A stretch of DNA of 64,000 bases, taken from Ruditapes philippinarum. Its lineage: Eukaryota. The stretch lies in assembly GCF_026571515.1 (NCBI RefSeq), contig NW_026862309.1, positions 248,001 to 312,000 on the forward strand, read 5' to 3'. Under the pieces are notes generated by a model that saw only the letters and a program-made list of their open reading frames with translations, had not been told where the DNA came from and did no database searches. The position numbers and the translations under genes were made by a program. Positions 127-61,891 of the stretch are shown here, in pieces; within the stretch, counting starts at the first letter, position 1, and each line of letters opens with the position of its first letter.

Positions 127-4042
<3,916 letters not shown>

Positions 4043-7239: not shown

Positions 7240-12240
<5,001 letters not shown>

Positions 12241-17913: not shown

Positions 17914-22543
<4,630 letters not shown>

Positions 22544-40064: not shown

Positions 40065-41990
40065 CAGAGCTCTATGAGATACAATGGAATCCGGGAACCA
40101 GTCCCTGGCTCTTATTGAATAGATTCCTTGGTTAGTTTAAACATAGTTTATTTCAAACAATGATACAAGTACATGTTGTTAATACATTTACAATAATTAG
40201 ATACACGAATGAAAAAGGATAAGAGCCGAAAGCTATAAAGCTTATAAAGGTCTTCTCCTACATATTTGCACAATGCAGTTAAATTATGACAGTGTTTGCA
40301 ATATTGTTTGAAACAATGAAGTTAATTTTTAACATATTTGAAACGAAAAAAAACGAAGATTTTAGCTATTGTTCAAAAGATCTTTTTTTAAAGAATATAA
40401 ATAATTGAAAAGAATAAGAAAGAAGGTAAAGAAGATTCATTCGATAGGTCAAGTTGGCCATATTATTTGCTCATGAAAATCGGTTACTTTCACGTATATA
40501 TACATGAACTGCTTGAACAATTTTAGAATTAATGTCATGGCTAAGATTCTGGTCTCCGTTTAGTAAGGTATGAAGTGTTATAGTACAAATATTAGAAACA
40601 GCATCAAATAGTCTGAGTCTGATATCATTATAGAAGTGACACTCAAAGAAGAAGTGGTGGTTACTTTTCCAGGAGACCACATTGACAATTTGGTGAGGGG
40701 GACATATTTTTTCTGAATAAGTGATGGTTTAAAGAGCTACATTCTGTTCGGAGCCGTGTATGCATGACTTGCCATTTTCTTTCACCTATATAATAGTATT
40801 TGGGGCATTTTTTTTATATTACCTTTAAGTTGCGTTTTAAAGGAGGACAAATATATTGAGTTTTGTACGTCTCTTGAGAGTGAGTTCCGATCTCTCAAAG
40901 TATATGGCAGAAATGTATTATGGTAAAAAGTAGTTCTTCTGCGTGTTGTTTGCATATCAGAACCATTTCGTAAATTGTACCTCGACGTTTATGGTGGGAC
41001 TAAGGACGATAAATAATCTGGTGTGAGACCATTTCTCATTTTGTAAAACAAAATAAGTTTGTGATTCTGTCTACGGCTTTCGAACGATTCCCAAAGAACT
41101 TCTCTTTGAAGTTTCCTGAAGAGATACAAGTTTAGTGGCCACTGTGACTATACGGGCGGCTTCATGTTGAATTTTATCAAGTTTCAAGTTTTTCATATTG
41201 TGTACAGTTGATCCGAGACTACATCGGCATATTCAAAAAGAGGTGGTATGAATGAAAGATTTATTATAAATAACTTCTAACGATTTTCTGTCTAGTATGA
41301 ATTAAAGATTTCTCGTGATATGAATTCTTTTCCAGGTCTTCTCTTTGATAGACCTAATATGTACATGCCAAGAGCAATCATCAGAAAAGTAAAGACCAAG
41401 ATGTTTATGACTATTTACTGAGGAGATAGGCTGATCATGCATTAGAAGTGGCGGTTGATAAGGCTTATTTGTTTTGCGTGACATGATCATAGTTTCCGAT
41501 TTAGAAGGTTGAATGTTACAAGCCATTTATCAGCCCAACTTGAAATTTTATCAATATCAGATTGAAGAGTTGTCGCGGCAGCTATTGGATAGTCAACTAT
41601 TATGTGCAAACTAGTATCATCGGCAAAGAGGTGTATACTTGAGTTTAAATCGTCAACAATATCATTAATGTATACCAGGAACAACAGAGGCCCAAGAATA
41701 GATCCTTGAGGAACTCCTGCATTTACAGTTGACCAATTAGAATGAGCTCCTGGAAGAACGACACATTGACGTCTGTTAGAAAGATAATCAGAGAACCAGT
41801 TCAGCAATTTTCCATTTAATCCAGCATTTTTTAATTTATAGAGAAGACCTTGGTTCTTTACATGCCCAGTGTATAGTACTGATACATATTTTTTAAAGTA
41901 CACTTCTAGGTAGGTGGGAAACACTGAAAGTGTCTCTGAAAAATCCCAAAGATGTTACCCAGGATCGAACCCGGGACCTCAGGAGTGACA
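40065..41990 (-). mobile_element. tRNA-derived SINE split by the LINE insertion
   Basis: Removing the LINE and one target duplication restores GGGAACCAGTCCCTGGCTCTTATTGAATAGATTCCTTGGTTCTTTACATGCCCAGTGTATAG. Minus-strand B-box CCCGGGTTCGATCCTGGG near 41958-41975. Confidence 0.6.
40134..41847 (-). mobile_element. 5'-truncated, frameshifted LINE (CR1/L2-group non-LTR retrotransposon; partial RT, C-terminus and 3' UTR)
   Basis: RT motifs GVPQGSILGPLLFLVYINDI, LFADD and HKHLGLYF; C-terminal Cys/His remnant (HHFFFEC); 3' end AATAAA..TGTTTAAAC. Flanked by the 8-bp direct repeat CCTTGGTT (40126-40133 and 41848-41855). Confidence 0.9.
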
Positions 41991-42319: not shown

Positions 42320-45300
42320 ATGGCGTCCTCGAATGTCGAATATTATCAAAAGCAGAAAGATTTACAAGATTCAATCATAGAAAAGTAAATAAATGATAAT
42401 TGCAATTTTTAGTAATTTTATGGAAATGTTAATTATGTTTTCTACTATAGAATGTGTGCGTATACATAGTATTCTAATACGAAAGCATGTTTTGTTGGAA
42501 CCATATCAGTTTCAAACGTGACAAAACACGCAAACCATTCTCATATAGAGTTATAGGTCTGAATAAACATGATAAACTATTTTAATGACTTTCACCTTAA
42601 AATATGAAAGTAAACCAAGCCTATGAACGGGAAGTCAGATAAAAATCAAATCGTTCATTCTTTATTTTACATTTTTCCTTTATTGCCTATTGGCAGTTTG
42701 GCTTTAACTGTTATTAATTTAATTCGAAGTGTCATTCGGCATTTCATGCTCTGTTTTGTTTTTTTTCAATCAGAACACCCCGACAATTATTCTTAAGCCA
42801 AAAAGTTGTGATTGTTATGTTATTGGAATACATTGTTGATTATCATTTTATTTTAGTCAGCAGTGTTTTTTTCCACCAAAATATTCGGCGAAATTCTCCC
42901 TATTCCCCCCTCAAAATAGTATGTTTTTTTCCCCCCTCAAAGCTGAAATTTCCCCCTATAATATGGCAGCCCAAAACTGCCTGCAATGAATATCATTTTT
43001 TTGCAACTAACTGCCGAAAAATGCTTTATTTTATGCCTTTAAGACTTACTGTTAAGCAAGGTTTTTCATATAGGTAAGGGAAGCTACTCCTGGTATCCCA
43101 ACAAGTTTATCATGTGACACATCAATATTTTAGATCCGTATAAAAATCCCCCTCCTATTGCATTTTTCCCCCTCCAATGGGCACCGACCCCCTTCCCCCA
43201 AAAGTGAAAAAAAACACTGGTCAGGGCTCTCAGTAGGGTCAGAATTTCACGAGTCAAAGACTCTTTGGCTAAAATTTTCATGAGTCAAATAATTTTTTTC
43301 TAGTGTCATTTGACTACATGAATCATTATTATGTTACAAAAATAACTGTATTGGAGGTCATTTTTGGAGATTCCAAAGTCTAAATTGACAGAAAAAAATG
43401 CCTAATTATAAATGTCTATACCCCCACCACCTAAAAAACAAAACAAAAAACAAATAAAACAAAAACATGAATTGCTGTGAAAGAATAAAATAAGCAGCAG
43501 CTTTTCTGATTAAATGTATAAAATATAAAAAAATATCTTTACTGGTATGCTATATCATATTAATTTTAAATACCAAAATGTACCAGGAATATTTATAAGA
43601 AATGCACAGGTACTCCAAGTAAATGAAAGACGTATTATAAACCTTCAGAAGCAATCAATAATTGACACCTCAAGTATGTAATTCTTATCAGTTGTGTAGA
43701 GCTATTTTTAGCGCTGTCAAATTGCAGCCACTGAATTGTCGCGCTTCAGTGCACAGGGTATAAACAATTGCCGTGTGTAAAGCATTTTATACACATCTTA
43801 TACTGCCTGTTGACATTTTTTATGAGTGTGATTTGAACACATGTAGGATTTGATAGATAATTAGGGGTGGATTTAAGGTAATTATTATTGCATAGCTGAA
43901 AATCCCATGTGGAAAATTGACTCTTGAGCAGATTTTATCACGTGTCAAATATGTGCATTTCCCGATTTTCACGAGTCAAAACCCGGATCCCCGTGTCAAT
44001 CGAGAGCCCTGTTTAGTTACATTAAAAATGGGGGCACCTAATTAGAAATGACACTATCACTGAAAAGTTCACTGATAGGTATACAAATATACTCAGACTA
44101 CTTTATTTAGTTTTTTTTATTTGATTTCCTTTTAGATATACATAAGAAGTCTATAGCCAGGCAAGCCACAGCCCGTGCTCGCTTTGCAGTCTCGGCCTTT
44201 GACTTCACTGTAATATAGAATTTGACAAAGCCTATGAAAAGGGAAGTCGGTTAAAAAAATCGTTCATTTTTCAGTTTTAAAGGTGTCATTTGGTATTTCA
44301 TTCATCGCTTCCATTTTATCTAGTTCCCTGTCCTATTATGGTTCCCTTCCAAGATGGCTTTTTAGAAGTGTGCAGGGGATCAGTCTACACTTCCGTTTTC
44401 ACTCGGAATACTCAACGATTATTATTAATCCAAAAAGTTGCGATTGTTCGTTATAGCAATACCCCACCTATTATCATTGAGTTTCAGTACATTGAAAATG
44501 GTGGCGCCTGACTTTGACTTCCCCATATTATTATGAAATTAGGTGCTACCCACAGGTGTTTGATAATTTATAGAAGGAGGCTTGAAGGTGTGCTCTACGA
44601 TTTCACTCTAAAAGACTAAAATTTAAGGCCTCTTCCAAAGGAAATTTTCTTTAAAATCATGCAGTTTTTTTTAGCTTTTTACGGGGGTCTAAACCAGGAG
44701 TATATTTTGAAGGTTCAATCCATATTTGTAGTATAATCTTTCCTTTGGTTTAAACATATTTATTTAAGCTTGATTGGGAAACAAGTTCTTGCAACTTATA
44801 TTAATCACTTGCGAATCAGCTTCCTTGAACCAACCAGTACAGGTGTCATATGGAGAAACATGGTAGTGACCTGAGTAAGGCTCAAACCCATGATCTCTGA
44901 TTGAGAGGCAGACACCAGTGACCTTAAACACTAGGCCACAGCTCCCATTTATTATCTTTCCTTTCAATTTTGATAATAAATTGTAGTTTATTTTACAAAA
45001 GAAAAGTTTACCCATCATTTGTCGTGTGTTATTGTTGGCCCCCATTATCACTGCGGTATACCGTACCCCGGATATTGCTCGATATTGTGAGGACTTTCAT
45101 CCCATTTCGCGACTTTGAACAGGGAACAAAGGTAAGTTCAGCGACGATATTTTCCAAACTAATGGCTATTTCATTTATCTAAACGGGTTTTATATATCTA
45201 GAGGTATTTTTGTAGCTCTAAAGGACATAAAAGTATTACAGATATTTGTGAATTGATTAAACTACCCCTAAACGATCCGCTGCTCACTAGAAAATACTGA

Positions 45301-48300
45301 CCCGATACTGTAGAATGTTAGAAAATGACTATATTACCAATATAAAAAAAATTGAATCGAGCAATTTTTTTATTCACAATCCAAGTTATGCTTTGTCCAA
45401 ATTTCAGGTAAAAAGTGTGAAAGTACAAAAAAGATGCAGGCAAAAAAAGATACAAGAAACGTGTACCGAGTATTGCTTTTAAGTGTACAGAGTATTGCAG
45501 AAATAGCCCAACCTAAGTGTACAGTGTATTGCAAAACAGAATGAGCACATTAGTATGGGAAAATCGATATTTTTGTCTATTTTTTACGTCTGTTTATCGA
45601 GTCCATTTTTATTTTGCTGATAAATGTACTATTATATGATATTTATTCAAATATTTCAGATTCAACAATGCATTTTCAGTATTTTATTACTGTTCTTTTT
45701 CTACGGGCAAATACAGAGATTTAATTTCCCATTTGATTGAAAGTCAATTATGGATGAAATAAAGTGTGGTGGGCAGGGGTCGGGAGCAGGGTAGATCTAT
45801 CAAAATTGACGTTATAAATCTTTTAAATACATGTCTCAAGAAAATGTGTTTCTGAAAGAAGAGAATAAAAAACCATATTTAATGAAACATTAATAATAGG
45901 TTTTTACAGGGCAAGTTTGCCTTAAGAAACATATTGACACACTTAGTAAAAATATTGGCCCCGCGGGGCTTATGCCGTTCAAGCATGTCGGTATCGTCTT
46001 AACCTTTACGGCATGAGCATATTGCGAAAAAATGGCCGTTTTCATTGAATTAAACCTCCTGTTACAAGTTCAAACTGCTATGAAACTATAACAAAAAATG
46101 CTTCAATACTGTTCCAACTGGGCACAAATGTTGGCTGGACCATAGCCTGTGGAATAGCATGCTCGATTTTAAATTTCCATCTACCATGGCACCGGAGGAC
46201 GTCTCAAAAAATTATTGCCAAAAATCTCTATTTTGCGTTGTTTTTTTCCATAAAAACTGATTTCAAGTGCAGCAACTTCTCAATTGATTGAGATAAAGTC
46301 TAAGGCTTTTCGGCATTGATTACACGGCATCTTTAAATCGACCTGAGGCCATTTTACCACCCCACAAGTCCCAAATCTCGGCGATTAGAGGGGCTACTGC
46401 CCAACTTCAAACCCCCAAACAGAAGGGGACACATCCCCCTGTGTCCCCCTTGATGTACCCCTTTAATGGGGGGTGGCGCCGAAAAAGTGATCACTCTTTT
46501 GAACATTTCTCAAACGAAAAAACCAGTGTTTGGGGCCTAATAAGTGCATGTTTTACACTATTTGAGGCCTCAAAAGGGGTGTGGTGTGAAGCCTTCAAAA
46601 CACGCCTTTATGAGGTAAAAGGTTATAAGGAACATAACCTTTTAATTGCATCTGCTGCCCTTTATCATAATCTTATTAAAATCCATTATTCTGTTTTTGA
46701 GCTGTACTCGCTCGGCAGTCATACGGTGACTCATTGCTAATGATGTAACAATTTTCACGTGCAGACGGTCTGCCGTTGCTAGAGTGCAGGTGCAAAATGA
46801 CCGAAAGTTACCTTTATATGGATTTTTGGCATAGTAGGAAGTCGGTTGATATTAGATATTGGCACATGTCACGGTTCAGAACTGTTCACTAATTCGGGGT
46901 GATGATGTGTAAGCGGCGGGAATAGCTCAGTCGGTTAGAGCCGCGGTACGGTATTCCGAGGTCCCTGAAATTAGTGAACAGTTCTGAACCATGACACACT
47001 TGCTCAATACCGTCTACTATTGACAATCTTGAGGCAGCATTAATGCACTTTGGATGCATTTTTTTTTTTACTATTTAAAGTAAGATATGCAATAATTATT
47101 AACAAATTCTGAAAGGTTGATCCTTCGATAGCAACGAAAACTTTGTAAACACAGAAAATTTGCTGAGTTCGTTCGACTGAGATTTTTCATGAGCAGGAAT
47201 GAAAATCTGGATTATTTGCAGATGTTTCCAGTAAAGTACCTCCAAACTCTGCCTATTCTGCACATATAGTGTAAATAAGTATACACAATAAGATATATTT
47301 AAGATTAAATGTGGTAAATACTCTGTGTTTACTACTTGCATTTACTCGATATTGATAACCAATACTCGTTACACTAAAGGCAATACTCGTGACACCGGCG
47401 GGCAACTCCAACGCAATACTCGGTACACTGACATGTGTATTCATTCTCAAAATGCACTGCCATCTGAGGTTCTATTGTTGATTGAACATTAACAACATAA
47501 ACATTATCATCATTAACACATTTCACTCGATTCAAGTTTTTCTTTTAAGGAAGTATATGCAGAAAAACATCAAATTTGACTGATCCGAGCTCATTTATCA
47601 CGTGAGCAAAGAGACGAATTTTACCTCCTAATTACATTTCAAAGCTATTTCTCAACACTTTTGGGGGTTCAGTAACTAGAGAAATTATCGAAGTATTTGT
47701 TTTTCTATAGAATTTATATCAAACCAATTCAAAATGACTAAATATCGTCACTGAACTTACCTTCTTTCCTCGTTGAAAGTCGCGAAATGGGATGAAAGTC
47801 CTCATTATATCGAGCAATATCCGGGGTACGGTATACCGCAGTGATTATAGTTAGTACAACCTTTTGTAACATCTTATTTAAATTCTTGTGGGAATTTGAT
47901 TGAAATTTTAAAAGTTTCATTTCAAGAAACTTGCTTTGTCATTTTCATGGTTTTGATAATTTATTGTTTTCAGTGAACAGAAAAGAAAAAGACTAGAGGC
48001 ACAGTTACAAGCATACAGTCAGTCTGATCATAAATTGTAAGATATACTGATAAAGTATTACACACAGTGCAATACTTTCATTTACATATATACATTTATA
48101 TAATGATAACAAAATACAGATTCTTACACATTATACTATGCAAATGTTTCAAATATTTAATTAGATTTAAAATCATTAAATGTATATGATGACTTAAGTA
48201 CTTGTTCTTGGTAATGATATAATGATCTTTCTTGTGTACCAAATTGGTAATTGTTTTTAATATTACAACATATTTAACAGGTAAACAGACATAATGGATG

Positions 48301-51300
48301 GTAGAAAACAATCTACAACTATACAGAACTTTCTAACCAAAAATGAAATTGGAAATGAGGAAAATAATCGTTCAAAAAATATTACTTTGTAAATGCGAGC
48401 AATGTTTGACTGTTTTGCACAAAAAATCTGGTTTAGTTTCACATTAGGCTGTTTGGTTTATTTAGATGGATAATGTACAATACTGTTTTGGTTTGTTTAT
48501 AAATATAAAAAATAAGCACTTATAGCACATGCATGCATTTTAATATGCCAACAAATTTCTTAAGTGAACTTAATTATTAATCAGTAAATTTCTGTATTTC
48601 AAGAATAAGCATGACTTTGTTGAAATCTGTTTTTGAATGAATGGGTATTTTTGACTTTAATTGACTTTATACACAAGTGACAAGTATGTGTTTTGGAAAA
48701 GTTTGATATAGAAGTTGTTTGCCACATTCTTTGCTGTCTTAGTCTATCTTTCTATATGGATAAGTTAATCCGTAATTACTAAAGCTTTTATTATAAAGTT
48801 TATTAAACTGTTGATTTTTTTTTAAACCAAAATGATTTTTTTTTTCAATAATTGGTTATAAACATGATATCTGCAAAAAAGTATGATTTTAGAGAGAGAA
48901 AAAAAAACCCAAAAAACATTTATTATGCGCCTTTGTAGTGGGGGGATAGAAACTTCAAACTTGGTATATTGGTCTGATGATGACAAGTAGTTCTGCACTA
49001 TTGTTTTTTTGGTCACAAGCACTGGTGCATTGGTATTGGGAAGTAGATGACCCCTATTAATTTTTGGGTCAAAGTCACATTGTCCATTTTTATCAAAACT
49101 GTTTTCAACCAGTAACTTGAAAACCCATGGGTCTTTTGCCCTCAAACTTAACAGGTTCATTGGTCTTGGCCAGTAGATGACCCCTATTTATTTTGGGGTC
49201 AAAGATCAAGGTCACATTCACCTTGTTTGCACAACTACCCATGGGCCCTTGTCCCTAAAACTTTACAGGTGCGTTGGTCTAGACACTTGTTGTTTTTGAG
49301 ATAATAATTGAATTGGGGTACTTGAAATCAAATCAATTTGAATAGCTGGTGAATCATTGCAGCCATAAAACCTACTATTTTTAAAAGTTAATTGTGTACT
49401 TCTTCCTTATTCATAAGCACATACTGTTACATAATCAGTTTCTCTGTGACTTTCATAATGGTTTTTTATTCTTACTAGCCAAGATAAGAGAATACATGCC
49501 ATATTGCCAGCCATCCAGATAATGGATTTGTCTTGGAAAAAGCAAGGGGTAAAAAGGGGGAGTGACCAGTATATCTATATGTGGCATTTTGAAATTTCTT
49601 GTTCAATTTAGAAAACTGTTTTAATCTTAACAAATTTTATTTCTTATAATGTACCTTTTGCTTTTGACAGATTTAACAATATTTTTAAGAGCCTTTTGTA
49701 AACAATGATCTATCACACACATATATGGCAATATTTTAATTAATGCCAAGTCAATTTGATTTCCTGGCTGAAGTATCAGATTTTTTTTCTCACTAATTTA
49801 CTTATATTTTTTTCTATTCAGAGCAAAGCTTAGAGCGGTTAAATTACAAAGTTATTGGAAGAGAATCTGTGAAGATGAGAAGCGTAGCAAACAGAGAAAT
49901 GCTCAGTTATTGCGAGATCTGGATAGGATGGAGGCAAACATGGCAAGTTTGGAGGCACGTAGAGAGAAACTCAGACATATGAAGGTATGTTTACTTTGAA
50001 TTACTTAAAAAGTTTTATTGCATTGCATTATAATGATTTCAACAGGTGGTATACTTGTAGATCAATGTACCTGTAGGAACAAAAAACATCAAACTTTTAA
50101 TGTTATATATCAGCCAAAACTAAAATAGTTTTCACTCCGGGTGTAACAAAACTTTAAGTGACATCATGGCTGTGTAGTTAACATATCTGGCATGTATAAG
50201 GGACAGACCCACGAATGTGGCTTTAAATCCTACACAATCAAACTGAATTTCAGTTTTAACAAAAACTTTCAGCCCATGATAGATACAAACTACAATACAA
50301 TACAATGGCATGCAGAGAAACACAAAAATATCATGTTTAAGCTGGCTAGTTCTACATTGACTTTATTTTATATTGCATTTTGTTTGCAGCAAAATTATTT
50401 TGATTACATTGAGAGGACATATCCTAAATGGCTGGAACTTGTTCAGCAAAAGAAACATGAATATATACAAGAACAACAACAGAAGCATGAACAACAATAT
50501 CAGCAGCAACACCAGCAGCAGTTCCAACAACAACAATATGAGCAACAACAGAGATTTCAACAACAACAACAGCAAGTACAGCAACAACAATATTTTTCAA
50601 GTTCTCAGGCAAGGAGACAAGAGTATGGACAATCTCCTGGTAGTCAACAAAGTAAACGACAGGAAGAGACATTACCTAAACAACAAGAAGCTTTCCTAAC
50701 CCAGCATCAGTATGATGATACTAGAGATCTATATGAGGTTAGTTATGTCAAGAACTTAAATACTACATACATATGAGCCGCGCCATGACAAAACCAACAT
50801 AGTTTGTTTGCGCAATTGCGACCAGCATGGATCCAGACAAGCATACGCATCAATGCAGTCTGATCAGGATCCATGCTGTTCGTTTACAAACCCTATTACA
50901 AGTAGAGAAACTGATAGCGAACAGCATGGATCCTGATCAGACTGTGCGGATGCACAGGCTGGTCTGGATCCATGCTAGTCGCAAACGCAAGATGTTGATT
51001 TTGTCATGGCACGGCTCAATATGAATTTATGTCACTGTCTTGATAAACATTTTGTTTAATTTAAGGTTTCTATTCTAGAAGGTTCTTATTGTTGATCTTG
51101 TCTATAAGTGAAAATTTGTTTTAGGGTTTGATCACCTTAAATTTTGTTTAATTTCCTTTTCTTTACAGAAATAGAATTGAATACATATATTCAAGGTTGT
51201 ATGTAAATGATTAGAAACAAAGTGCAAAAATAGTGCTAATCCCTCACAGGCACTTGGTTTTTTTGATTTTTTCTTTAAGCAAAGGAAAGTTTTACATAAG

Positions 51301-54300
51301 CCACTAAACTTCTGCCAATTTATTGCTTGAAAATTGTGTTTGTATTTATGATGACCTAAAACTGGTTTAAGTTAGCCATACATTTTATATTATTAAATAA
51401 CAGTAAATGTTGTAATTGTTTTAGAATGATCGTGATGAAGAGAGCCCGCCACCTTTACCTAGTCAACCACCACCAACTGTACCATTTAGTGAACCTGAGC
51501 GAGAATATACCAACCTGAGAGATATTAGGAGAGATAATCCGGTATGTAATGATTTGCTTCCTATGTCCACTGTGCATATATTTATCAAGATACCTATCAT
51601 TTTGATTAGGATCACAGTCCAAACACCATTTATTGGCAATTTGTATATGCATTATATGTATTAATAAATTCATCAATTGAGATTTTATTATAGTTCTATA
51701 TGAAAAGTAAGCCTTTGGGCATGTATTGTCATACCTTTGCAGCTTTCTGTTATCATCACATGATGAGTATCATAGATTTCATTTATAATATACATGTATT
51801 ATAGAATCAGGTAACTCCACAACCACAGTCTGTGACTGTACACATGCCCAGTGCACAGGGAGATGCTGTATCACCCAGTAAATCAGGTCGACCTGGTAGT
51901 GGGAGGAGATCAGAACAGCCAAATCAGAACTGGATGGCAGCTGAAAGAGATGCCAGTATACACAGTCTAAGCTTTAGTGAGGAGACCGACGTACAACCTC
52001 CAGCTATACAGAGTGTTACAGTCAGACAGAAAACTGGTACAGTTAATGTTTTTTTCTTAAACAAAAGACCATTTCTTTAATTTCCAATAATAACACCTTA
52101 TTCTTTTATTGACCTGCTCTGAATATTAAAAGATATAAGGTTATTCTTTGACAGTGTTAATTCTAGTTAGTACAGTTATGTTTAGTTATGTAATTTATTA
52201 TCAGAAGTTTAAACTATATAATACAGAGCCTCCTAAACCTGTAGTACAAACAATGGAGCCAGTGTCAGATGAAGATGTGAGTGATTTTGGAGATGAGCCA
52301 GATTTACCTAGTGGTGCAGATGGTGACAGGGTAGACATAGTGAAACCTCCATCACCTGTACAAGCTGTAGTAGAGGAACATGATGATGATGATGAGGATG
52401 ACACTGATCGGTATATTTCTGTTCAATTTGCAGTTTATGAATTAAAGCAATTTCATTTTTTTAGGAATATTTGTTTGAATAGTAAAAGAAATGCTCCATT
52501 TGTTTCTCTGACAATATCCTTCTACTATTCACAAACTACTAACTGTGATTTAAAGGATGATTTAAATATCATATAAATCCTTTTGCTTATTTGCAGACTT
52601 AAAATGTCGCTTAATTTAGAAATGTGTATCTTTATTTTACTTGTTTCAAACTTTCAAATATGCCAGTTACTATTGTTTATAAATACATTATACTAATCTG
52701 TTATGTACAAGTTATTAATGTTATGATGAAATCAAAGCATCTTAATTGCCTAATCACATTGTCTTACCTGATTATTAACAGAACTCCGTCCATTGTTCAT
52801 CCAGAAATAAGTACATCTGGTCTGTTTCGACTTTTAAAATTTGTGGAAGAGGAACTGTTGAATGCATTGGCCCTAGAAAATTTCTACCGGACTAGAAATC
52901 CAGATGAGGCTACCAAGAAAGATATTATATAGTATGCTTTGTTTTGAACCTTAATTGTATGGTTTTTATACGTACAATTTCATATTTCTTTTTTGATAAA
53001 ATATTTAAACTATAGTATGTTTTAGACAACAAAACATTTTATTGTAAGCATGAGGCAGGTTGTAGTCTTTTTATCCAATAAGCTTGCCTGATATACGCAG
53101 TGTGGAGTGTGTTTGATCAAGTGATTTCAGTTCAGTGAGCATCATGTTTATCTCTTTGGCTGATGACAATTTGTCATTTGCCAGCCACCCATGTTTCAAT
53201 TTGAGAAATTCAGATTTTATTGCAAATAAACAGATACATTCTGACACAATATCCAGGAAGTTTTATAAATTAACACCCTGTAGATAGATTACTGAAGTAC
53301 TGTTGTTATATTTTTCATCACCAAGAACATCAAGCAAAATGATATCAATATCTATTAAGTCGGCATATTTTCTGCAAAGTTTTTTGGGTATTATACCTGT
53401 TAAAATTCTTTAAATCCTTGATATATATTACTTGTAGTAAAGCGAATAATGAGAACAGTAGCCTGCAGTCTCTAGATGGTGAGTTAGTCAGTATGGTTAT
53501 ACTGCAACAACTAACACTTGTCGTCCGCAGACTTCCTGGAGGGTGTATGTTATCTGATACCTTACTTGTCAGGGGAAGTCACTCAAGCACAAATGAACAA
53601 ATCAGGTAAATTTAATTACTGGATCTTCTGGTAGATTTTGAAAGAATGATGGTTAAGAAACAAGTATGTGGACAGCAAAGGAATATTTTTTTCTCTTTAT
53701 TATATCATATTATACCTTACATCAAAAACAATTGTATCACACAATTTCCAGCTTTATCTGGAACATAACATAAGGAACAACTGTTACTCAAAATGCTATG
53801 TTTTTGTATTTATACAAACACTTTAAATAAATGGGTTATCAAAAAATGTACATTTCCTTGTTGAATACCATATTCCAGACAAGTATACAAAATTAAATAG
53901 TAATAGTGCAAAAAACTGAAAATGATTACTTGTTTAATGATGTATGTAAACTTAGTCTTATTTTTAATGTGAAGAATCTTCTTAAATGACTGGTTAGAAA
54001 TGGAGGTTCCTAAAGCAATTGCTGAAAGAGCACTTTATTACAATTTAACAAGTTTTAAACATGTTCCTATTTCGGCTCAAGGTTATTGTCATGTTTCAAT
54101 TAATTTTACATTTAAACTATACATTGAATACTCTAGTAACTTCCATTTAGAACAATCTGTATTTTATGTCATTTAATATTTTAACTATAAAACAATTTCT
54201 ATAGATAAAAGCACAGTGGTCAAGTAAATAAACATTATATTGAACTTCAATATTGTAATTCATTGCTATGTATGTACAGGTGAATTTAAATTCACTATTT

Positions 54301-57300
54301 TATAAGTTAGTTTGTTTTTTTCAGGTCAAATTTACACAGAGATGCTCAAACATTATGGGATAAACTGATGGAGCATTTTATTCTTCTTGTAAAGAATCGT
54401 GTGATGGGGACACGTGAAGTGGCTCATGTGTTTGTACCTTGTCTTGTTCATGCTGGTTCAGAGAATCAGGCTAAGGTTATTATTTTATCTGGCATTCATA
54501 TTTATATTTAAAATGGTAGAGATTATAAATATGAGCTGTAAAGTTACGCTGGAAATGTTTAAGTACCTGGAGCCCATTACATTAAAAACTATTTGTTATT
54601 AAAAACTATATATAAGCTAAAATTGATAAACATTTATTTAAAATCAATGAGATTGTTACACTATCACTAAGCCTTTATTAAAATGCCTTGCAAATCATTT
54701 GAATAATTATATGTTTCACTATATATTAATTTTCAGCTAATGTCTTTAAAATATATTTCATACCAAAACTGTTTAAAAAAACTTAATTGTTTCAAACAAT
54801 ATTACAAAAACTGTCATAATTTAACTACTTATTACACAAATATAGCAAAAGACCTTTATAAACTTTATAGTTTTCGGGTATATTCGTTCTCATACATTTA
54901 TTTATATTTTGACAATGTATTACTAACATGTTGTATTCATTGTTTGAAATATATGAAAACTAAGTATTGTAGTATTGTATCATGTACATGTAGGTATAAT
55001 TTTTGGTGTATCTAAAGTTTATAATTTTCTGATGGAAGACTATAAAAAGTATCGATAACAATGAATCAAGACCAAGGTGAGTTTTAAGTTATTATAAGGA
55101 TATTGTTATGTGAAAGGACAGATATTACATTGAGAGTTTATGTTTACTGAGATATTGATGTGTTATACAGGCTGTGAGTGTTATAGAGGATATAATAGAG
55201 AATGCTATAGAGAAAGTTGACGGTAAATCATCTCCTGTACCACAAGATAGTTTAACAGTTGATACAGCACGCAGCAGCCAACAGGGTGCAGGTATACATT
55301 GATTTTTCTTCTCTATTGAATCAATTTTGCATGCTTTAATTTTTATTTAAAAAAATGTATTTATATCTGTATATTTTTTAATAAAATAATTTGTATTTTT
55401 TTATTTTTGTTTTTTCTTTAACTATTATGATACAATATGTAGTTAGTGAATTGAAAATATATAACTTATAGATTAACAATTCACCTAAAAGAAGACAGAA
55501 ATGGTAACTTTTTATTTAGAGCTTATGAGTCACTGTTATTCCATTATCCAACATGCATTTTCAGAATTAGCCCGATACTAAAAAACAAATATCCAGGTCT
55601 AGTTTTGGCAGTCAAAAAACCCGTCATCTTAAGCTCATTTACCAGTAAGTCGTAAACATAAATTGATTTTCTTGTTTGACCTTGGCCTATGGCAAACAAT
55701 TTCTACCCATTTTTCAAATAGTTTCATAATCATCCTGTGTTACAGATAAGAGGACAATGTGATGTAACTTGTTTAATTACATTTGTAATTTGTCTAATAT
55801 TTAAAAAATTTTTAGGGTTTATGCGTAAAATATCAGCATACAAGCTATGTATTTACAATCTGCATGGCGTTTGGGTAACGTTAAGAATGGGTATAATAAC
55901 TTTGGTTTCAGTCTACGCTCTATTTCCTGAATTACATCTATTTATCTCTTAGATAATGGTCTGTTCAACAATTGTAAATGAAAAATAGGTCCGATATAAT
56001 AAAATTATATAATTACAATGGGTTAGATTTTATGTACGGGAACTACTTCTCTTCATACAAAATAATGGATAATTTCGGTACCCCATTTGAGGCCTCATAA
56101 GTAAGGGTTATTCTATGTTTAGAACATGATGGAATTTCCATGATTTGTGTTACGAGCCGAATATTGATGTGTAACATTTAAATTTTGGTGAGTGATCGTA
56201 ATAAAAAATAATGTTTAAGTAACTATGATTTTTGTACGGGAACTGCTCGCATGCCAGTATATATATAATTAAGATTTATTACAATATTTACAACTAAAAA
56301 GGAAGGACAAGGAAATGGGTTGAAACTTTACACACTTATTTGAGAGCATTATAGGAGGTCACTGTCTAATACCCATATCCTAACATGGATTTTGACAAAA
56401 TGTAGCCATTTTGTAGCTTAGAAAATTCTACATTATCCAGGCTCTTGTTTTACTATCAAACACACACCCGTCATACTTACAGCTCATGTTACAGTTTAAG
56501 TCTGATATAACTAATAAAATTGAATTTCTTTATTGACACTTGGCCTTTTAGTGGCAACAAATTCTACCCATGCAAATAGTTCAGACTCATCTGTGCTTTC
56601 TGATTGGAGAGAGAGAGAAAAATGTGTTTTTATCTTTACATACATGTATGTAATTTGTCTAAATATTTGAAAAAAATTGTAGGGATATATATGAATATCA
56701 ACCTATCAGGTATACAGTACTGTATTTAACAATCTGCATGGCTTTTGTGAAAGTAACAGTTAAAGAAATAGAGTTATTAATAATTTTGTTGTTTTCAGCT
56801 TTCTTAGAGTAATTAGATATTGTGAAATTTATGTTTATACAACTATCTTAGACAATCATTGTGCATGAAAATTTATTAATACCTGATGCTTCACAAATAA
56901 TTAAGATCATTTTTTTTTTGTAATAATATTAAAGAGTTGTTTAACTTACACGACTTTTGACTTACACTCCTTTGTACTGACATTTGATAATACCAGGTCA
57001 TTCATTTTATTAATAGTATTGAAATACATCTTACACAATCAGTGTGTTTTTTTTGGTCATGCATAAAGTATTAGAAAGTTTGAAAGCTGTTTTGTTTTCT
57101 TTCTGACTAACATTTTATTCTACATGGTTTAAGATATGGTATTTTATTGACTTCTATAGAAGAATATCATAGAAAGTAAGGGGGAAGGTATTTACCTGAT
57201 AATTCTTAGGGTTAAAATGAAACTAACAATGTTGCATGTCTATTATTTCTTACCTTTTGTAGTTTTATATTTTATCACATTTTCAATTTATATATAAAAC

Positions 57301-60300
57301 TGAAGTTTTGACATAGAATAATTGCAGAAAAAGTAAAATCACCTTCTTTGGCGAATTTGCTATGCTATATGTCTCTTTAAAACAAAGAATGATTTTATTA
57401 TAGTATTGGTAATTGATCACAATTTTATTTCAAACCACCAATTAGACTCTAAACAAAAGCCTACGTGGAAAATAATCCACCATAAAACATGCATACTGTT
57501 TCCATTTATTTAGTGAAGTAATATCATATAAAATGTTTTTGAATATGTTTTTTAATCATTAAGCAATTCTTCAGTTTTATGTATTTTCCACAAATATAAA
57601 GTTCATTATTTTGCTAAGGGACAAGTTTTTGTTAGTTTTGCATGTGATTATGATGTTTTATTAGAAGTGTGTAAGTGTTGTGTTTCACCTCTATAGTTCC
57701 TCCCCTGAAGTTTGGCAGTCTTGTTGATAGTAAACCATTCAGTGATGAGGAGTCCAGCATGATCACACAAAGTATGAATACAGATGTACAAAAAATTCCC
57801 TTAAATGGTAAGACAAAAGAATGAATACAGATGTACAAAAAGTTCCCTTAAATGGTAAGACAAAAGAATGAATACAGATGTACAAAAAATTCCCTTCAAT
57901 GGTAAGACAAAAGTATGAATACAGATGTACAAAAAAATCCCTTAAATGGTAAGACATCAGTATGAAAACAGATGTGCAAGACAAAAGAATGAATACAGAT
58001 GTACAAATAATCCCTTAAATGGTAAGACAAAAGAATGAATATAGATGTACAAAAAGTTCCCTTAAATGGTAAGACAAAAGAATGAAAACAGATATACAAA
58101 AAATTCCCTTCAATGGTAAGACAAAAGAATGAATATAGATGTACAAAAAGTTCCCTTAAATGGTAAGACAAAAGAATGAAAACAGATATACAAAAAGTTC
58201 CCTTCAATGGTAAGACAAAAGAATGAATATAGATGTACAAAAAGTTCCCTTAAATGGTAAGACAAAAGAATGAAAACAGATGTACAAAAAGTTCCCTTCA
58301 ATGGTAAGACAAAAGTATGAATACAGATGTACAAGAAAATTCCTTAAATGGTAAGACAACAGTATGAATACAGATGTACAAAATATTCCCTTAAGTGGTA
58401 AGGCAAAAGTATGAAAACAGATGTACAAAAAGTTCCCTTACATTGTATGACAGTTTTATGAATACAAATGTACAAAAGTTTCCTTAAATGGTACACAGAT
58501 GTACAAAAGTTGACAATAGTATGAAAACAGATGTACAAAATTGTCCCTTAAATGGTAAGACAGTCTTATGAAAACAGATGTACAAAGTTGATAACAAATA
58601 GTACAAAAGTTGATAACAAATAGTTGAATTATTCTAATTTATAGATAGCTCTTTGTTTCTATATGGTTCTGTATGCAACACTTTCCTGTCATTAACATAG
58701 GATTGTTACTTATTGTAGAAATTAAATTGTACTTTGGGTGTTAAATTGTAAATTCTTATTTGGTTTGGTGTAACATAGTAAAAAGTACTGTTTTTTTTAA
58801 TATAACGTATACATACACTGATTTTTAGAGATGTGGTTAAAGGTAAAAACTTATATTGTTCACTCTTAATATTGTTATTTGCATGATCTAGATTGAAAAT
58901 CAGATTTTATTTTTGTGATGAATGCATTGGTCATTACTACTTTTTTCATGTATATTCACCAATTTACACTTTTTAATTATCATTCACTACATGCAGTTTG
59001 ATTTGTTTGGTTACATCTGTACATGTATATTACAAAAACAAATTTAATCAGTGTTATGCATTTTAAAGGTTTGATGTTTCAATTGCCTGTGCATTTTTAC
59101 TTTTTTAAAATGTCATCTTACATGAGAAATATATTACAGAAACAGATGCGTATAAAAATCTGATAAGTGGAACACGTCCTGCAGTACGTACAATGAGCCA
59201 TGACGACACAGATAATTCTGATAATGAGTTAGAAAAACAAATAGCTTCTACTCTCTCACCCCGAAGTCACGGAAGGTAGGTGCCCACCTTGCAATAGTTT
59301 CTACTTTATAGTGAAAAATCTCTCCTTTCCTGTTGTCGTATTTCCTTTAGGCACCCTTACTAAATCCCTACATTTCAGTAACATTCTAACCAAACTATTG
59401 AAGTCATCAATGTTTATGATTTAAAATTAGTATTTGTACTTCACATTGAATTATGCAAAAATGTAAAATATTGTGATACAAAAGTAACCTTTCTTTACAA
59501 AAGTATAACTCTTTAACATATTATTATATTCATGCCAGTACTTCTAGAATGTTTCTAATTAAAAAAGTCTGGACTAAATTCATGATGTTTCAAATTTAGA
59601 ATGTGTAGATGATTTGAAGGAGTGGCCTTTACTCAATTTGTGAAATGAACATGCCAAATTCTAAAGTTTTGGAATTGTCCATTTGAAGGAATCTTGACAA
59701 TCAGAGTCTGGTCAGTTTGCACAGGCTAATACAGACTGTTCTGCTGCTGGCATAGACAAGTCATTTGTCTTTAGTGTTTAAAAAGTCAGATACATGTACT
59801 AAATGAGGACTTACATATGATTTCTTCACAATAAAACTGTCTTATCTCAAATTTGTTCTACTTTTATAACAAGAAACTAAACAAAAAGCTTGAACAAATC
59901 TATGAAAAGTTTCTCTAGTTGCTTAAAACTAGCCTCTATTGTGTCCACACAAGCTATTAATGTCTATTCACATGTTTACATGTACTTAAAAAATTGAGAA
60001 ACTTTTAATTTTCTTTTTACACATAGTACAAGTTTTCTCATCACTTTGTAATCATTTAATTTTAACATCACCGTGATACTGTAATGTATATGTTGTAGAG
60101 ATATTTCACCGTATAATGTGTAGTATTTCTTTTATTGACCATTTGAATTCCTACATTGACAGATATTTCTATGTGTAATGTACAAAACAGGGTGAGAAGG
60201 CTGACTATTTATGATTTATTTTGGTTTTGCTATTTTTATAGTCGCAGTTTGTGCATGCTAATTTGATACTTCACTTTTGTAGATTAATTTCAAAAGATAA

Positions 60301-61891
60301 GATAGCCTAGCTTAAAGATTCAGTGGTTACATAATGAGTGTTATTTAAACATTACAAACTATAGTAGTCAGATTAAGAAAATTGAGCAGTTTTAGTGAGT
60401 AGTGCTATACTATAGTTTGTTACCATGGCATTGCTTTATAACTGAATACATCAAGTCATTTAAAAGAATCAATATTTCAGATATGCTTTGTAAGTAAATG
60501 TAGTATAGAAATTTCATAAATCTTGCTTTTTGTACATCATTTAAACAAGCGAAATTACATAAAAATGGACAGGGGATATTTCAATTATTCTTATAATATA
60601 TAGTTACAGTATATTGCTTATATTATTGTATTCTTATAATGAAACATTTATAGCTTTACATATATATATATATATTTCAAATATATATCAGTATACATAT
60701 TTAACACAATGTAAGTTTTACAGCTATTTATAATCAAAGGATGTAGATAATAACTTTAAGATAGATAGTGTTTCACATCATAATAATGACAAGTTTTATA
60801 GTGTATAAAGCTATATCTCTGCTGCCTCCAGTTTATAAAAAAATTATGTTTTGAGTTTTGAAAAGAATAATGCTGGTCGCAAACCCATTATGTTGGTTTT
60901 GTTGTGACGCGGCTCAAAGTGTGTTAAAAAATTTCTATGTTACAACTTATTTGATAATAGACCATAAGGTTATGGAAACAACATCATTACTGCTTTAAAT
61001 TTTTGTATAAAAATCATTAGATAAAGCTGTATACACTTTATTGTGTATATTTTTATAGTGTAAAGGATATTTAATATTCTTGCTTTAATGCATGTTTATC
61101 ATAGACAGTTGAAATATTGTATATCATGATTATATAAACATACATTTCTCAACAATTCAGCATATTTCAAATTTAAGTGACTAAATAGCAAATGACCAAA
61201 ATGTTCGGAATTTTAATTTTTCCAGTTTCTCAACTTAAACAATCAAATGATGTTATAGTTTCACTTTCAATTTAAGTTATTGTATGAAGCTTTTATATTG
61301 TGCAAACATGTATTATCATGATGTACTAGTTTCAACTGGTTGTACAATATTGTAATGTTATGTTATTGTATGTGAAAGGGAGGAGAGGGGGGTATTTCCA
61401 AGTAATGTTATAGGCATTTAAAGGGTAAAAAATTTATAAATCAGTCACTGTTGAAAATTTGGAACAATATAAATATTGTTAACCACACTCATTGTATAAA
61501 TTTCATTTCAGAAACGACATTTGCTTGTAGTTGTAATTGAAAACAAGACATTTTTTTATTAAATATTGATCGGGGAATCTTTCACATACAATTATCAGTG
61601 GCATTACAAAATACTTTCCTCATAATGAGCTTATGTATAGACTATATATCATTTGTAAGTTTTCAGGGCACTCTTCTGTCATTTTCCTGAGCAATACTCA
61701 TTTATTAGTAAATTAGCATTTCATCCTTCTGTTAACATTTACAGTAAACCCCATTCTGACCCTCATAATGATGTTCCCTTTAGTGCCCCCAAAGATGCAT
61801 CACATGATCTGTCACATGATAATGAGCCTCAGTCTGAACTCAGCTCACCATCAGCTGCACCAGTATATGTCCCTACAGGGGTAGAACAAAG
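42320..61891 (+). CDS. KIZ: Centrosomal protein kizuna-like (PLK1S1); 3' end not found
   Basis: GT-AG exons 42320-42384, 47974-48036, 49822-49984, 50390-50737, 51425-51541, 51805-52036, 52227-52410, 52782-52931, 53438-53605, 54325-54475, 55171-55291, 57697-57807, 59140-59275 and 61745-61891 splice in frame (~718 codons, no stop). The N-terminus EYYQKQKDLQDSIIENEQKRKRLEAQLQAYSQSDHKLAKLRAVKLQSYWKRICEDEKRSKQRNAQLL matches my recollection of the vertebrate KIZ N-terminal coiled coil, and PLNETDAYKNL resembles its C-terminal ETxAYxxL motif. Confidence 0.85.
42858..44011. mobile_element. hAT-like non-autonomous element with 6-bp target duplication, interrupted in its left TIR by the MITE above
   Basis: TIRs CAGGGCTCTC / GAGAGCCCTG; TTTAGT at 42852-42857 and 44012-44017; repeated TTTCACGAGTCAAA subterminal motif. 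Confidence 0.7.
42861..43219. mobile_element. hAT-like MITE with 5-bp target duplication
   Basis: TIRs CAGTGTTTTTTT / AAAAAAACACTG; GTCAG at 42856-42860 and 43220-43224. Confidence 0.75.
44760..44946 (-). mobile_element. tRNA-derived SINE (V-domain-like core)
   Basis: Minus strand: A-box TGGCCTAGTG, B-box-like GGGTTTGAGCC, core GTACTGGTT..AGGAAGCTGATTCGCAAGTGATT, and AAAT tail. Confidence 0.6.
45049..47843. mobile_element. Non-autonomous CACTA/EnSpm-type DNA transposon (2.8 kb) in KIZ intron 1
   Basis: ~105-bp TIRs beginning CACTGCGGTATACCGTACCCCGGATATTGCTCGATA (45049-45152 and 47740-47843); 2-bp target duplication AT. Subterminal motif GTAC.G.GTATTGC occurs three times near 45463-45532 and inverted near 47380-47426. 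No transposase ORF. Confidence 0.85.
46867..46996. mobile_element. Inverted fragments of the TRIM terminal repeat, forming a foldback around a tRNA-like segment
   Basis: TGTCACGGTTCAGAACTGTTCACTAATT ... AATTAGTGAACAGTTCTGAACCATGACA, with A-box TAGCTCAGTCGG inside; same family as 19553-19911. Confidence 0.7.
48920..49290 (+). mobile_element. Degenerate HINE/satellite-family fragment
   Basis: Repeated core AGTAGATGACCCCTATT..TTTTGGGGTCAAAG..GTCACA with ~130-bp spacing. Confidence 0.5.
50774..51018. mobile_element. Palindromic (foldback) MITE in KIZ intron 4; a right-end fragment also lies at ~60870-60917
   Basis: TIRs TGAGCCGCGCCATGACAAAACCAACAT / ATGTTGATTTTGTCATGGCACGGCTCA; internal inverted CTGATCAGGATCCATGCTGTTCG / CGAACAGCATGGATCCTGATCAG. 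Confidence 0.85.
57768..58625 (+). repeat. 47-bp minisatellite derived from the KIZ exon 12 / intron 12 junction
   Basis: Consensus aaaagWatgaaWacagatgtacaaaaaRttcccttMaatg|gtaagac, about 17 units including degenerate ones. The first unit is the coding end of exon 12 (SMNTDVQKIPLN). Confidence 0.93.

What the first reader, a model, noticed from the sequence alone, without database searches (positions are those of the whole stretch)
57697..58625. A KIZ exon end and its 5' splice site amplified into a minisatellite of ~13 competing donors
Seen: the last ~40 coding nt of KIZ exon 12 plus the donor (AATG|GTAAGAC) form the 47-bp repeat unit. Intact ATG|GTAAGA donors have their GT at 57808, 57855, 57902, 57949, 58022, 58069, 58116, 58163, 58210, 58257, 58304, 58351 and 58555, with variants near 58398, 58445 and 58491. 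The first donor joins exon 13 as PLN-ETDAY. Reading past it gives GGT AAG ACA AAA GAA TGA, so any downstream donor includes a premature stop. The units decay toward the 3' end. Inference: a copy-number-variable array of identical decoy donors could act as a heritable dial on productive versus NMD/truncated KIZ mRNA, or as a U1 snRNP sink. It is also a snapshot of tandem duplication of a splice site. How the spliceosome picks donor 1 among identical sites is unexplained.
Basis: partly seen in the sequence, partly recalled or inferred. Interest (0 to 1): 0.78.

Follow-up and report, generated by a model that had tools for sequence, protein, structure and literature searches.

The report
Splice-donor minisatellite in clam kizuna gene
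The end of one exon of a clam centrosome gene and its splice signal have been copied about 16 times into the next intron, a known kind of repeat, and the assembled transcripts examined use only the first, original signal.

Summary
A 47-bp minisatellite (57769 to about 58625, about 16 units) begins with the last 39 nt of a real coding exon (57697-57807) plus its donor. It reiterates ATG|GTAAGA 13 times, exactly at the listed places. The gene is a bivalve kizuna-like (KIZ) gene.

The exon end (…SMNTD…PLN|ETDAYK) is conserved in three homologues, so the array grew out of the exon, not the reverse. The unit occurs nowhere else in the 1.4-Gb assembly.

Transcript contigs of 4 of 4 RNA-type runs join donor 1 (GT 57808) to acceptor 59140. 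No listed joint uses a decoy donor, but contigs cannot exclude rare use, and 16 weaker joints were not shown. Any decoy use would carry an in-frame TGA at 57822.

This is the known "mirage", or human F7-IVS7-type, exon-boundary minisatellite. In F7 the choice of the most upstream of identical donors was studied experimentally (PMC1557585; PMC3087553). The "dial" and "U1 sink" ideas have no support here.

The scan has already found and followed up the same kind of array on other DNA of this genome. Verdict: real, ordinary, a new member of a known kind.

The parts
55171..55291 (+). Upstream coding exon ('exon 11') of the kizuna-like gene
   Evidence: RNA contigs lie on 55169-55289, with a GT..AG joint 55289->57695 (cut +2) in X19, X20 and X15. 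tblastn of the Dreissena kizuna-like protein P0011 matches 55171-55299.
56683..56709 (+). 27-nt alternative cassette micro-exon, in frame (adds GIYMNINLS)
   Evidence: X17 joint 56707->57695 (GT..AG, cut +2; 2 contigs, side 21). The sequence reads tag|GGATAT..ATCAG|gtatac. Dreissena isoforms carry VIYENLNYA at the same spot and P0004 lacks it.
57697..57807 (+). Coding exon ('exon 12'), 111 nt, encoding (V)PPLKFGSLVDSKPFSDEESSMITQSMNTDVQKIPLN
   Evidence: Covered by spliced contigs in 4 of 4 runs. Translation. It is 79-82% identical to P0011 and P0004 over the whole exon.
57805..57813 (+). Authentic 5' splice site ATG|GTAAGA (GT at 57808)
   Evidence: Joint 57806->59139 (skips 1332, GT..AG, cut +1) in X19, X20, X15 and X17. 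It matches CAG|GTAAGT at 6 of 9 positions.
57769..58625 (+). 47-bp minisatellite of about 16 units; unit 0 is the exon end plus donor
   Evidence: TRF, the repeat finder, unit table. It is private to this locus in the 1.4-Gb assembly.
57822..57824 (+). First in-frame stop (TGA) if the authentic donor is read through
   Evidence: ORF 57675..57824 ends ...IPLNGKTKE*; confirmed by script.
57949..58021 (+). Irregular 73-nt unit (a 47-nt unit plus a 26-nt partial unit)
   Evidence: Spacing of 73; sequence.
58022..58303 (+). Homogenised core: six units that alternate between two subtypes, a 94-bp higher-order repeat x3. Units starting at 58022, 58116 and 58210 are identical.
   Evidence: Unit table; 91-100% identity among the reference-length copies.
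58398..58625 (+). Decayed 3' tail, with altered donors GTAAGG, GTATGA and GTACAC, one intact donor at 58555, and a 22-bp sub-repeat at 58569-58624
   Evidence: X17 lacks 21 nt at 58581, and X15 and X17 contigs differ in structure here (tables 4 and 5c).
58626..59139 (+). Unique remainder of intron 12 with acceptor ...tatattacag|AAAC
   Evidence: joint.
59140..59275 (+). Coding exon ('exon 13'), (E)TDAYKNLISGTRPAVRTMSHDDTDNSDNELEKQIASTLSPRSHG
   Evidence: RNA contigs lie on 59139-59275 in all 4 runs. The peptide finds kizuna-like proteins at 70-76% identity.

Best explanation
This is a 'mirage'-type (F7-IVS7-type) exon-boundary minisatellite in intron 12 of a single-copy bivalve kizuna-like (KIZ) gene. 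A 47-bp segment spanning the last 39 nt of exon 12 and the first 8 nt of the intron was duplicated in tandem. The likely cause is slippage or unequal exchange between the short direct repeats ACAAA(A)G that flank it; this step is inferred. The array then grew and turned over like any minisatellite: a homogenised 94-bp higher-order core and decaying edges. Each unit carries a copy of the donor as a passenger. The splicing machinery uses the most upstream, authentic donor, which closes the 111-nt exon next to its own acceptor. The downstream copies are removed with the intron. Any leak to a decoy would meet the TGA at 57822 and probably be degraded (inferred). The array is most likely a tolerated, near-neutral by-product and not a regulatory device.
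For: Array anatomy and exact donor copies. The exon is real and donor 1 is used: joint 57806->59139 (GT..AG) in 4 of 4 RNA-type runs, and in three of them one contig chains exon 11, exon 12 and exon 13. No listed joint runs from a decoy donor. The exon end is ancestral: SSMITQSMNTD-x(3-4)-PLN|ETDAYK is conserved in 3 of 3 full-length homologues (Dreissena, Mya, one unnamed transcript). Local origin: the 235-nt query hits only this locus, and the 28-nt junction pattern with up to 3 mismatches gives 13 of 13 hits in the array, 0 elsewhere and 0 for the control. The flanks are single-copy. There is no sign of selection on the donors: hypergeometric P 0.52 for the 9-mer over 12 units, and 0.07 after dropping the decayed unit. 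RNA folding is no stronger than in shuffles: z +0.64, +0.86, +1.93. Precedents with the same behaviour: amphioxus mirages do not disturb splicing (PMC3087553, PMC3902484; passages). In human F7 IVS7 and LMNB2 only the authentic donor is used (PMC1557585).
Against: All four runs were Logan contigs. Contigs drop rare variants and reflect steady-state RNA, so NMD-degraded decoy products would be invisible. '16 more joints' were not shown. Two of the runs (X15, X17) are only guessed to be RNA. After dropping the decayed unit, the 12-mer AATGGTAAGACA is the longest invariant part of the unit (P 0.024, post hoc), a faint hint that the donor region is better kept. In human IFI6 and CBS the two proximal pseudo-sites are used (PMC1557585 Introduction), so some leak at donors 2-3 is plausible. 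The microhomology origin is read by eye and is not tested.
Confidence: 0.8

Rival explanations
1. One reading: the decoy donors compete with donor 1 and divert part of the pre-mRNA into PTC-containing, NMD-targeted or truncated mRNA. Array length would then act as a heritable dial on KIZ output.
For: All 12 further intact donors are identical to the authentic 9-mer. Each would bring in the TGA at 57822. NMD would hide such products from steady-state contigs. Human IFI6 and CBS use two proximal pseudo-sites (PMC1557585 Introduction). F7 repeat number is reported to correlate with mRNA level (PMC3492156 passage). Contigs of other individuals differ in the structure of the tail.
Against: No joint from a decoy donor is listed in any of 4 runs, while the donor-1 joint is in all 4. 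In the best-studied case the pseudo-sites do not compete at all (PMC1557585). Where leak is known it involves only the first one or two copies, so total copy number would matter little. The donor motif is not significantly conserved. The scan's earlier notes list many arrays of the same kind in unrelated genes of this genome, which fits a mutational by-product better than gene-specific regulation.
Confidence: 0.07
2. The reiterated U1-binding sites help the gene. Intronic U1 snRNP binding could strengthen definition of exon 12 or suppress premature cleavage and polyadenylation in this AT-rich intron (telescripting-like).
For: There are 13 U1-complementary sites within 750 nt downstream of an exon whose donor is of only average strength, 6 of 9. 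The window has 32% GC. That U1 suppresses premature polyadenylation is recalled knowledge and comes from no call.
Against: There is no direct evidence. The 3' units have lost the motif along with the rest of their sequence. The motif is not significantly conserved. None of the other exon junctions mapped in the window (13 exon matches) has such an array.
Confidence: 0.05
3. A U1 snRNP sink: the array titrates U1 in trans.
For: Only the multiplicity of the sites.
Against: Thirteen sites on a modestly covered transcript (word depth 16 to 250, which is not a measure of expression) are negligible against cellular U1, which is highly abundant (recalled knowledge). The scan's notes list many similar arrays in this genome.
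Confidence: 0.01
4. An assembly artefact: the array or its length was created by mis-assembly.
For: The exact copy number of a 47-bp array is hard to assemble. Contigs of X15 and X17 show different structures in it (table 5c).
Against: Low-depth intronic contigs of independent runs cover the array bins (table 2). In one search, 12 of 20 holder rows hold half or more of the sampled words of the 9-kb stretch. The units carry an ordered pattern of variants, with a higher-order core and a decayed tail, that is typical of real arrays.
Confidence: 0.02

Closest known systems
Human F7 intron 7 (IVS7) 37-bp VNTR, and the similar arrays in IFI6 (6-16), CBS intron 13, LMNB2 and PDGF listed in PMC1557585
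   Same: A minisatellite whose first unit spans an exon-intron boundary, so the authentic donor is followed by identical pseudo-donors. In F7 and LMNB2 only the most upstream site is used, as in the contigs here. The donor is of ordinary, not perfect, strength.
   Different: Here the unit is 47 bp and takes 39 exonic nt (F7: 37 bp with 4 exonic nt). There are 13 intact donors, against 5-9 in F7. The host is a bivalve and the gene is kizuna-like. Polymorphism of copy number and the silence of the decoys are not shown experimentally here.
Amphioxus 'mirage' minisatellites (Adh3, globins BflGb6/9, troponin C, PGBD5)
   Same: Tandem repeats that span an exon-intron boundary in an invertebrate genome rich in such repeats. 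Splicing is reported as undisturbed. They show concerted evolution in the middle of the array and diverged edge units (PMC3087553 passages), which is the pattern seen here.
   Different: A different phylum (mollusc). Here the 5' splice site is the copied one; amphioxus has examples at both kinds of boundary. Somatic instability and intron gain, discussed for amphioxus, were not examined.
Regulated unproductive splicing (AS-NMD, 'poison' splice sites)
   Same: Use of any decoy donor would create a PTC-containing mRNA.
   Different: No alternative junction was seen. Conservation of the element could not be tested. The multiplicity comes from repeat expansion, not from a conserved regulatory element.

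Membership tests
Exon-boundary ('mirage' / F7-IVS7-type) minisatellite | Head-to-tail array of a minisatellite-sized unit with several copies | tested here: met
   47-bp unit, 4.5 + 11.0 copies at 93% and 88% matches; 15 in-register copies.
Exon-boundary ('mirage' / F7-IVS7-type) minisatellite | The first unit spans a real exon-intron junction, so the splice site is reiterated in the intron | tested here: met
   Unit 0 is the last 39 nt of exon 12 plus the donor. There are 13 exact ATGGTAAGA copies. The exon and junction are confirmed by spliced contigs in 4 of 4 runs.
Exon-boundary ('mirage' / F7-IVS7-type) minisatellite | The exon is the source of the array (the exon end is ancestral), not an exon recruited from a satellite | tested here: met
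   The exon-end residues SMNTD..PLN|ETDAYK are conserved in 3 of 3 full-length homologues. The unit is absent elsewhere in the genome.
Exon-boundary ('mirage' / F7-IVS7-type) minisatellite | The authentic, most upstream site is the one used; splicing is not disturbed | tested here: met
   The donor-1 joint is in 4 of 4 runs and no decoy joint is listed. Caveat: these are contigs only, and 16 weaker joints were not shown, so rare use is not excluded.
Exon-boundary ('mirage' / F7-IVS7-type) minisatellite | Length polymorphism among individuals (VNTR) | tested here: inconclusive
   X17 lacks 21 nt at 58581, and X15 and X17 contigs differ in tail structure (tables 4 and 5c). The core copy number cannot be read from k-mer contigs. 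There is no second haplotype in the assembly and no hit in metagenome contigs.
KIZ (centrosomal protein kizuna) gene | Encoded exons are homologous along the gene to proteins named kizuna | tested here: met
   The exon-13 peptide hits P0002-P0004 (E 3e-9 to 4e-7). Sources name these 'centrosomal protein kizuna(-like)' in Dreissena polymorpha and Mya arenaria. 13 exon matches of P0011 lie in order on the + strand from 42320 to 61886. The nearest Atlas clusters of P0011 are chordate kizuna, scores 0.97, 0.96 and 0.96.
KIZ (centrosomal protein kizuna) gene | Kizuna_N domain (PF28416) | tested here: inconclusive
   The local Pfam scans listed no PF28416 match for the exons or for P0011 and P0004. 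PF28416 appears only as an annotation of the Atlas clusters.
Regulated unproductive splicing (AS-NMD) | Alternative junctions from the poison sites detectable in RNA | tested here: not met
   None of the 15 listed joints links a decoy donor to 59139 in 4 runs. The test is limited: contigs, steady-state RNA, and 16 unlisted joints.
Regulated unproductive splicing (AS-NMD) | Conservation of the poison element across species | not testable with these tools

The most novel reading that the evidence does not exclude
The decoy donors are used at a low level that steady-state contigs cannot show. The products are removed by NMD, and the diverted fraction rises with the number of intact units. Array length would then be a heritable quantitative modifier of kizuna expression. 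Because the scan's notes list many arrays of the same kind in this clam genome, boundary minisatellites as a class could add copy-number-dependent expression noise or tuning in bivalves.
Probability: 0.06. Interest if true: 0.55.

Novelty: new member of a known kind. Interest (0 to 1): 0.2.

Why it matters
For this gene it matters little. The transcript contigs examined show the ordinary splice, and the array looks like a tolerated by-product of a repeat-rich genome.

Its value is as one more clean natural example outside chordates: 13 identical donors, with the most upstream one used. That agrees with the 'most upstream site wins' rule worked out on human F7.

Together with the other arrays the scan has noted in this genome, it suggests that bivalves, like amphioxus, are rich in exon-boundary minisatellites. 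Such arrays could serve as natural test material for 5' splice-site choice, for repeat-driven intron growth (the array makes up about 61% of this 1332-nt intron), and for annotation pitfalls, since gene predictors may pick a wrong copy of the donor.

Tried and rejected
Dispersed satellite or transposon origin of the unit: rejected. The 235-nt and 28-nt queries hit only this locus in the own genome.

Exonisation of a pre-existing satellite: rejected. The exon end is conserved in three homologues.

Masking of the decoys by RNA structure: rejected. Three 144-nt folds have z +0.64, +0.86 and +1.93.

Selection on the donor motif: inconclusive. P is 0.52 for the 9-mer and 0.28 for the 12-mer over 12 regular units. 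After dropping the decayed unit at 58398, P is 0.07 and 0.024. The 73-nt unit and tail units 14-16 were left out of that count.

Minus-strand ORFs through the array (73-114 aa): rejected as repeat artefacts. The GT..AG joints put the gene on the + strand.

Pfam on the exons and on the homologues: no kizuna family in the local copy, only a sub-threshold CEP15-like hit (25 bits, cut-off 27) for P0011.

Other boundary arrays in this gene: none.

A second allele was sought in three ways. There is no haplotig in the assembly. There were 0 hits in metagenome contigs. The contig joints inside the array (table 5c) are ambiguous, because the left sides fit several units.

Literature on boundary minisatellites in bivalves: nothing turned up in the listings. 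The abalone paper PMC6905558 (passages) describes an intronic 27-bp minisatellite and makes no boundary claim in the passages read. This is no proof that the subject is not in print.

Full report
THE OBSERVATION. The sequence at 57697-58625 is as described. Tandem Repeats Finder reports a 47-bp array at 57769-57979 (4.5 copies, 93% matches) and 57978-58493 (11.0 copies, 88%), then decayed rows up to 58624. The repeat finder puts 15 copies in register with spacing 47 and one spacing of 73.

The 9-mer ATGGTAAGA occurs 13 times in the 64,000-base window. The three 'variants' are GTAAGG (58398), GTATGA (58445) and GTACAC (58491). The window has no N and 32% GC. Only one other large array lies in the window, a 156/470-bp satellite at 35423-38198.

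THE GENE. The local Pfam copy has no family for these exons. The exon-13 peptide was searched alone against 1.84 billion representatives and gave 7 hits. Three are full-length proteins of 788, 543 and 517 aa, at 70-76% identity over the exon. Their sources name them 'centrosomal protein kizuna-like' (Dreissena polymorpha) and 'Centrosomal protein kizuna' (Mya arenaria, UniRef name); the third has no name.

tblastn of the Dreissena protein P0011 against the window lays 13 exon matches in order on the + strand from 42320 to 61886. The ESM Atlas places P0011 next to chordate kizuna clusters, with scores 0.97, 0.96 and 0.96. So 'KIZ' is supported, in a bivalve mollusc. The locus is single-copy in the 1.4-Gb assembly.

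IS THE EXON REAL, AND WHICH DONOR IS USED? Twenty rows of public runs hold part of window:51500-60500. I laid four RNA-type runs on window:54900-60500: X19 and X20 are on record as RNA-Seq, while X15 and X17 are only guessed to be RNA. All four are Logan contigs.

The joint 57806->59139 skips 1332 nt with GT..AG ends and a cut that fits one place further right, so it is GT 57808 joined to acceptor 59140. It is present in 4 of 4 runs, with word depths 16.2, 16.5, 249.8 and 179.6. In X19, X20 and X15 a single contig chains 55169-55289, 57695-57806 and 59139-59275.

None of the 15 listed joints links a downstream array donor to 59139. There are three limits. Contigs drop rare variants. Steady-state RNA hides NMD substrates. 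The tool said that 16 less-supported joints were not shown. The exon and the productive junction are therefore shown; the silence of the decoys is shown only at the level of the dominant transcript.

DIRECTION OF ORIGIN. The 39 exonic nt in the repeat encode SMNTDVQKIPLN. In all three full-length homologues the exon ends SSMITQSM(N/T/A)TD-x(3-4)-PLN and continues ET(D/E)AYK. The exon end is therefore older than the array.

The unit is not a dispersed element. A 235-nt piece of the array hits only this locus in the own genome. A 28-nt junction pattern with up to 3 mismatches gives 13 of 13 hits inside the array, none elsewhere and none for the reversed control.

The duplicated 47-bp segment is flanked by CACAAAG (57766-57772) and GACAAAAG (57812-57819). 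This suggests slippage or unequal exchange between short direct repeats; that step is inferred, not shown.

ARRAY DYNAMICS. Six units alternate between two subtypes (starts 58022, 58069, 58116, 58163, 58210 and 58257). They form a 94-bp higher-order repeat present three times, and three of the units are identical. One unit is 73 nt long, and the last four units are decayed. A homogenised core with diverged edges is what the amphioxus globin paper describes for mirage clusters (PMC3087553, passages).

Contigs of other individuals lack 21 nt at 58581 and differ in structure in the tail (tables 4 and 5c). The tail is therefore structurally variable. The number of core units cannot be read from k-mer contigs.

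TESTS OF THE FUNCTIONAL IDEAS. (a) Read-through of donor 1 gives GKTKE and then TGA at 57822, so every decoy product carries a premature stop.

(b) The authentic donor and the 12 further intact copies carry the identical 9-mer, which matches CAG|GTAAGT at 6 of 9 positions, the same as the exon 11 donor. No site in the intron reaches 7 of 9.

(c) The donor motif is not significantly better conserved than the rest of the unit. Two of 13 variable columns fall in the 9-mer (P 0.52). With the decayed unit dropped, none of 11 does (P 0.07; for the 12-mer P 0.024, post hoc).

(d) No RNA structure stands out: z +0.64, +0.86 and +1.93 for the authentic context and two core stretches.

(e) None of the other exon junctions mapped in the window has a boundary array.

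WHAT IS KNOWN. Minisatellites whose first unit spans an exon-intron boundary are described in amphioxus as 'mirages' (Adh3, globins, troponin C, PGBD5) and are reported not to disturb splicing (PMC3087553 and PMC3902484, passages). The original Adh3 paper was not read; it is cited there as reference 68.

In humans they occur in F7, IFI6, CBS, LMNB2 and PDGF (PMC1557585; abstract, Introduction and Discussion read). [quoted passage not shown] The most upstream site is selected by a 5'-to-3' scanning-type process. Only a pseudo-site with perfect consensus shifts the choice. In IFI6 and CBS the two proximal pseudo-sites are also used.

A review passage states that F7 repeat number correlates with mRNA level (PMC3492156). 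Two searches listed no paper on such arrays in bivalves.

EARLIER NOTES OF THIS SCAN. The same kind of array has already been noted many times on other DNA of this genome. Several follow-ups filed them as mirage-type repeats that assembled mRNAs skip. Those notes gave me the word 'mirage' and the F7 lead. I checked both in the papers, and I tested this locus on its own.

VERDICT. This is a real, cleanly built exon-boundary minisatellite in a clam kizuna-like gene, and a new member of a known kind. Most likely it is a tolerated by-product: the first donor is used and the copies are spliced out with the intron. Low-level decoy use followed by NMD, and any copy-number effect, remain untested rather than excluded.

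Noticed in passing
window 56683-56709 (+): A 27-nt in-frame alternative cassette micro-exon between exons 11 and 12, adding GIYMNINLS. X17 contigs join it to exon 12. Dreissena kizuna-like isoforms carry VIYENLNYA at the same place and the unnamed homologue P0004 lacks it. It appears to be a conserved alternative micro-exon.
   Followed up: partly
window 55835-56582: A stretch of intron 11 with very high contig depth (hundreds to thousands) and many loose ends in all four runs. It is a dispersed, transcribed repeat, probably a transposable element.
   Followed up: no
window 58569-58624: A 22-bp sub-repeat at the end of the array. One run (X17) lacks 21 nt at 58581, a small length polymorphism.
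   Followed up: partly
window 1235-2437 and 9552-10661 (+): Two tandem alpha-amylase-like long ORFs; the Pfam Alpha-amylase and Alpha-amylase_C hits are for the second one. Each is followed by a Ser/Thr-rich ORF and a shared '...QDLFIRGG...' segment.
   Followed up: no
window 20508-20741 (+): A calmodulin-like exon with an EF-hand pair (EF-hand_7, E 2e-19).
   Followed up: no
window 30882-32192 (-): A 436-aa uninterrupted ORF with no Pfam family above threshold.
   Followed up: no
window 35423-38198: A 2.8-kb satellite with a 156-bp unit and a 470-bp higher-order period (5.9 copies at 90%).
   Followed up: no
window 41302-41924 (-): ORFs that look to me like reverse transcriptase (read by eye, no family search), about 400 nt upstream of the first kizuna-like exon match at 42320-42382.
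   Followed up: no
window 50384-50740 (+): A Gln-rich coding exon of the kizuna-like gene with imperfect 18/21-bp CAA/CAG repeats. The Dreissena homologue is also Gln-rich here.
   Followed up: no
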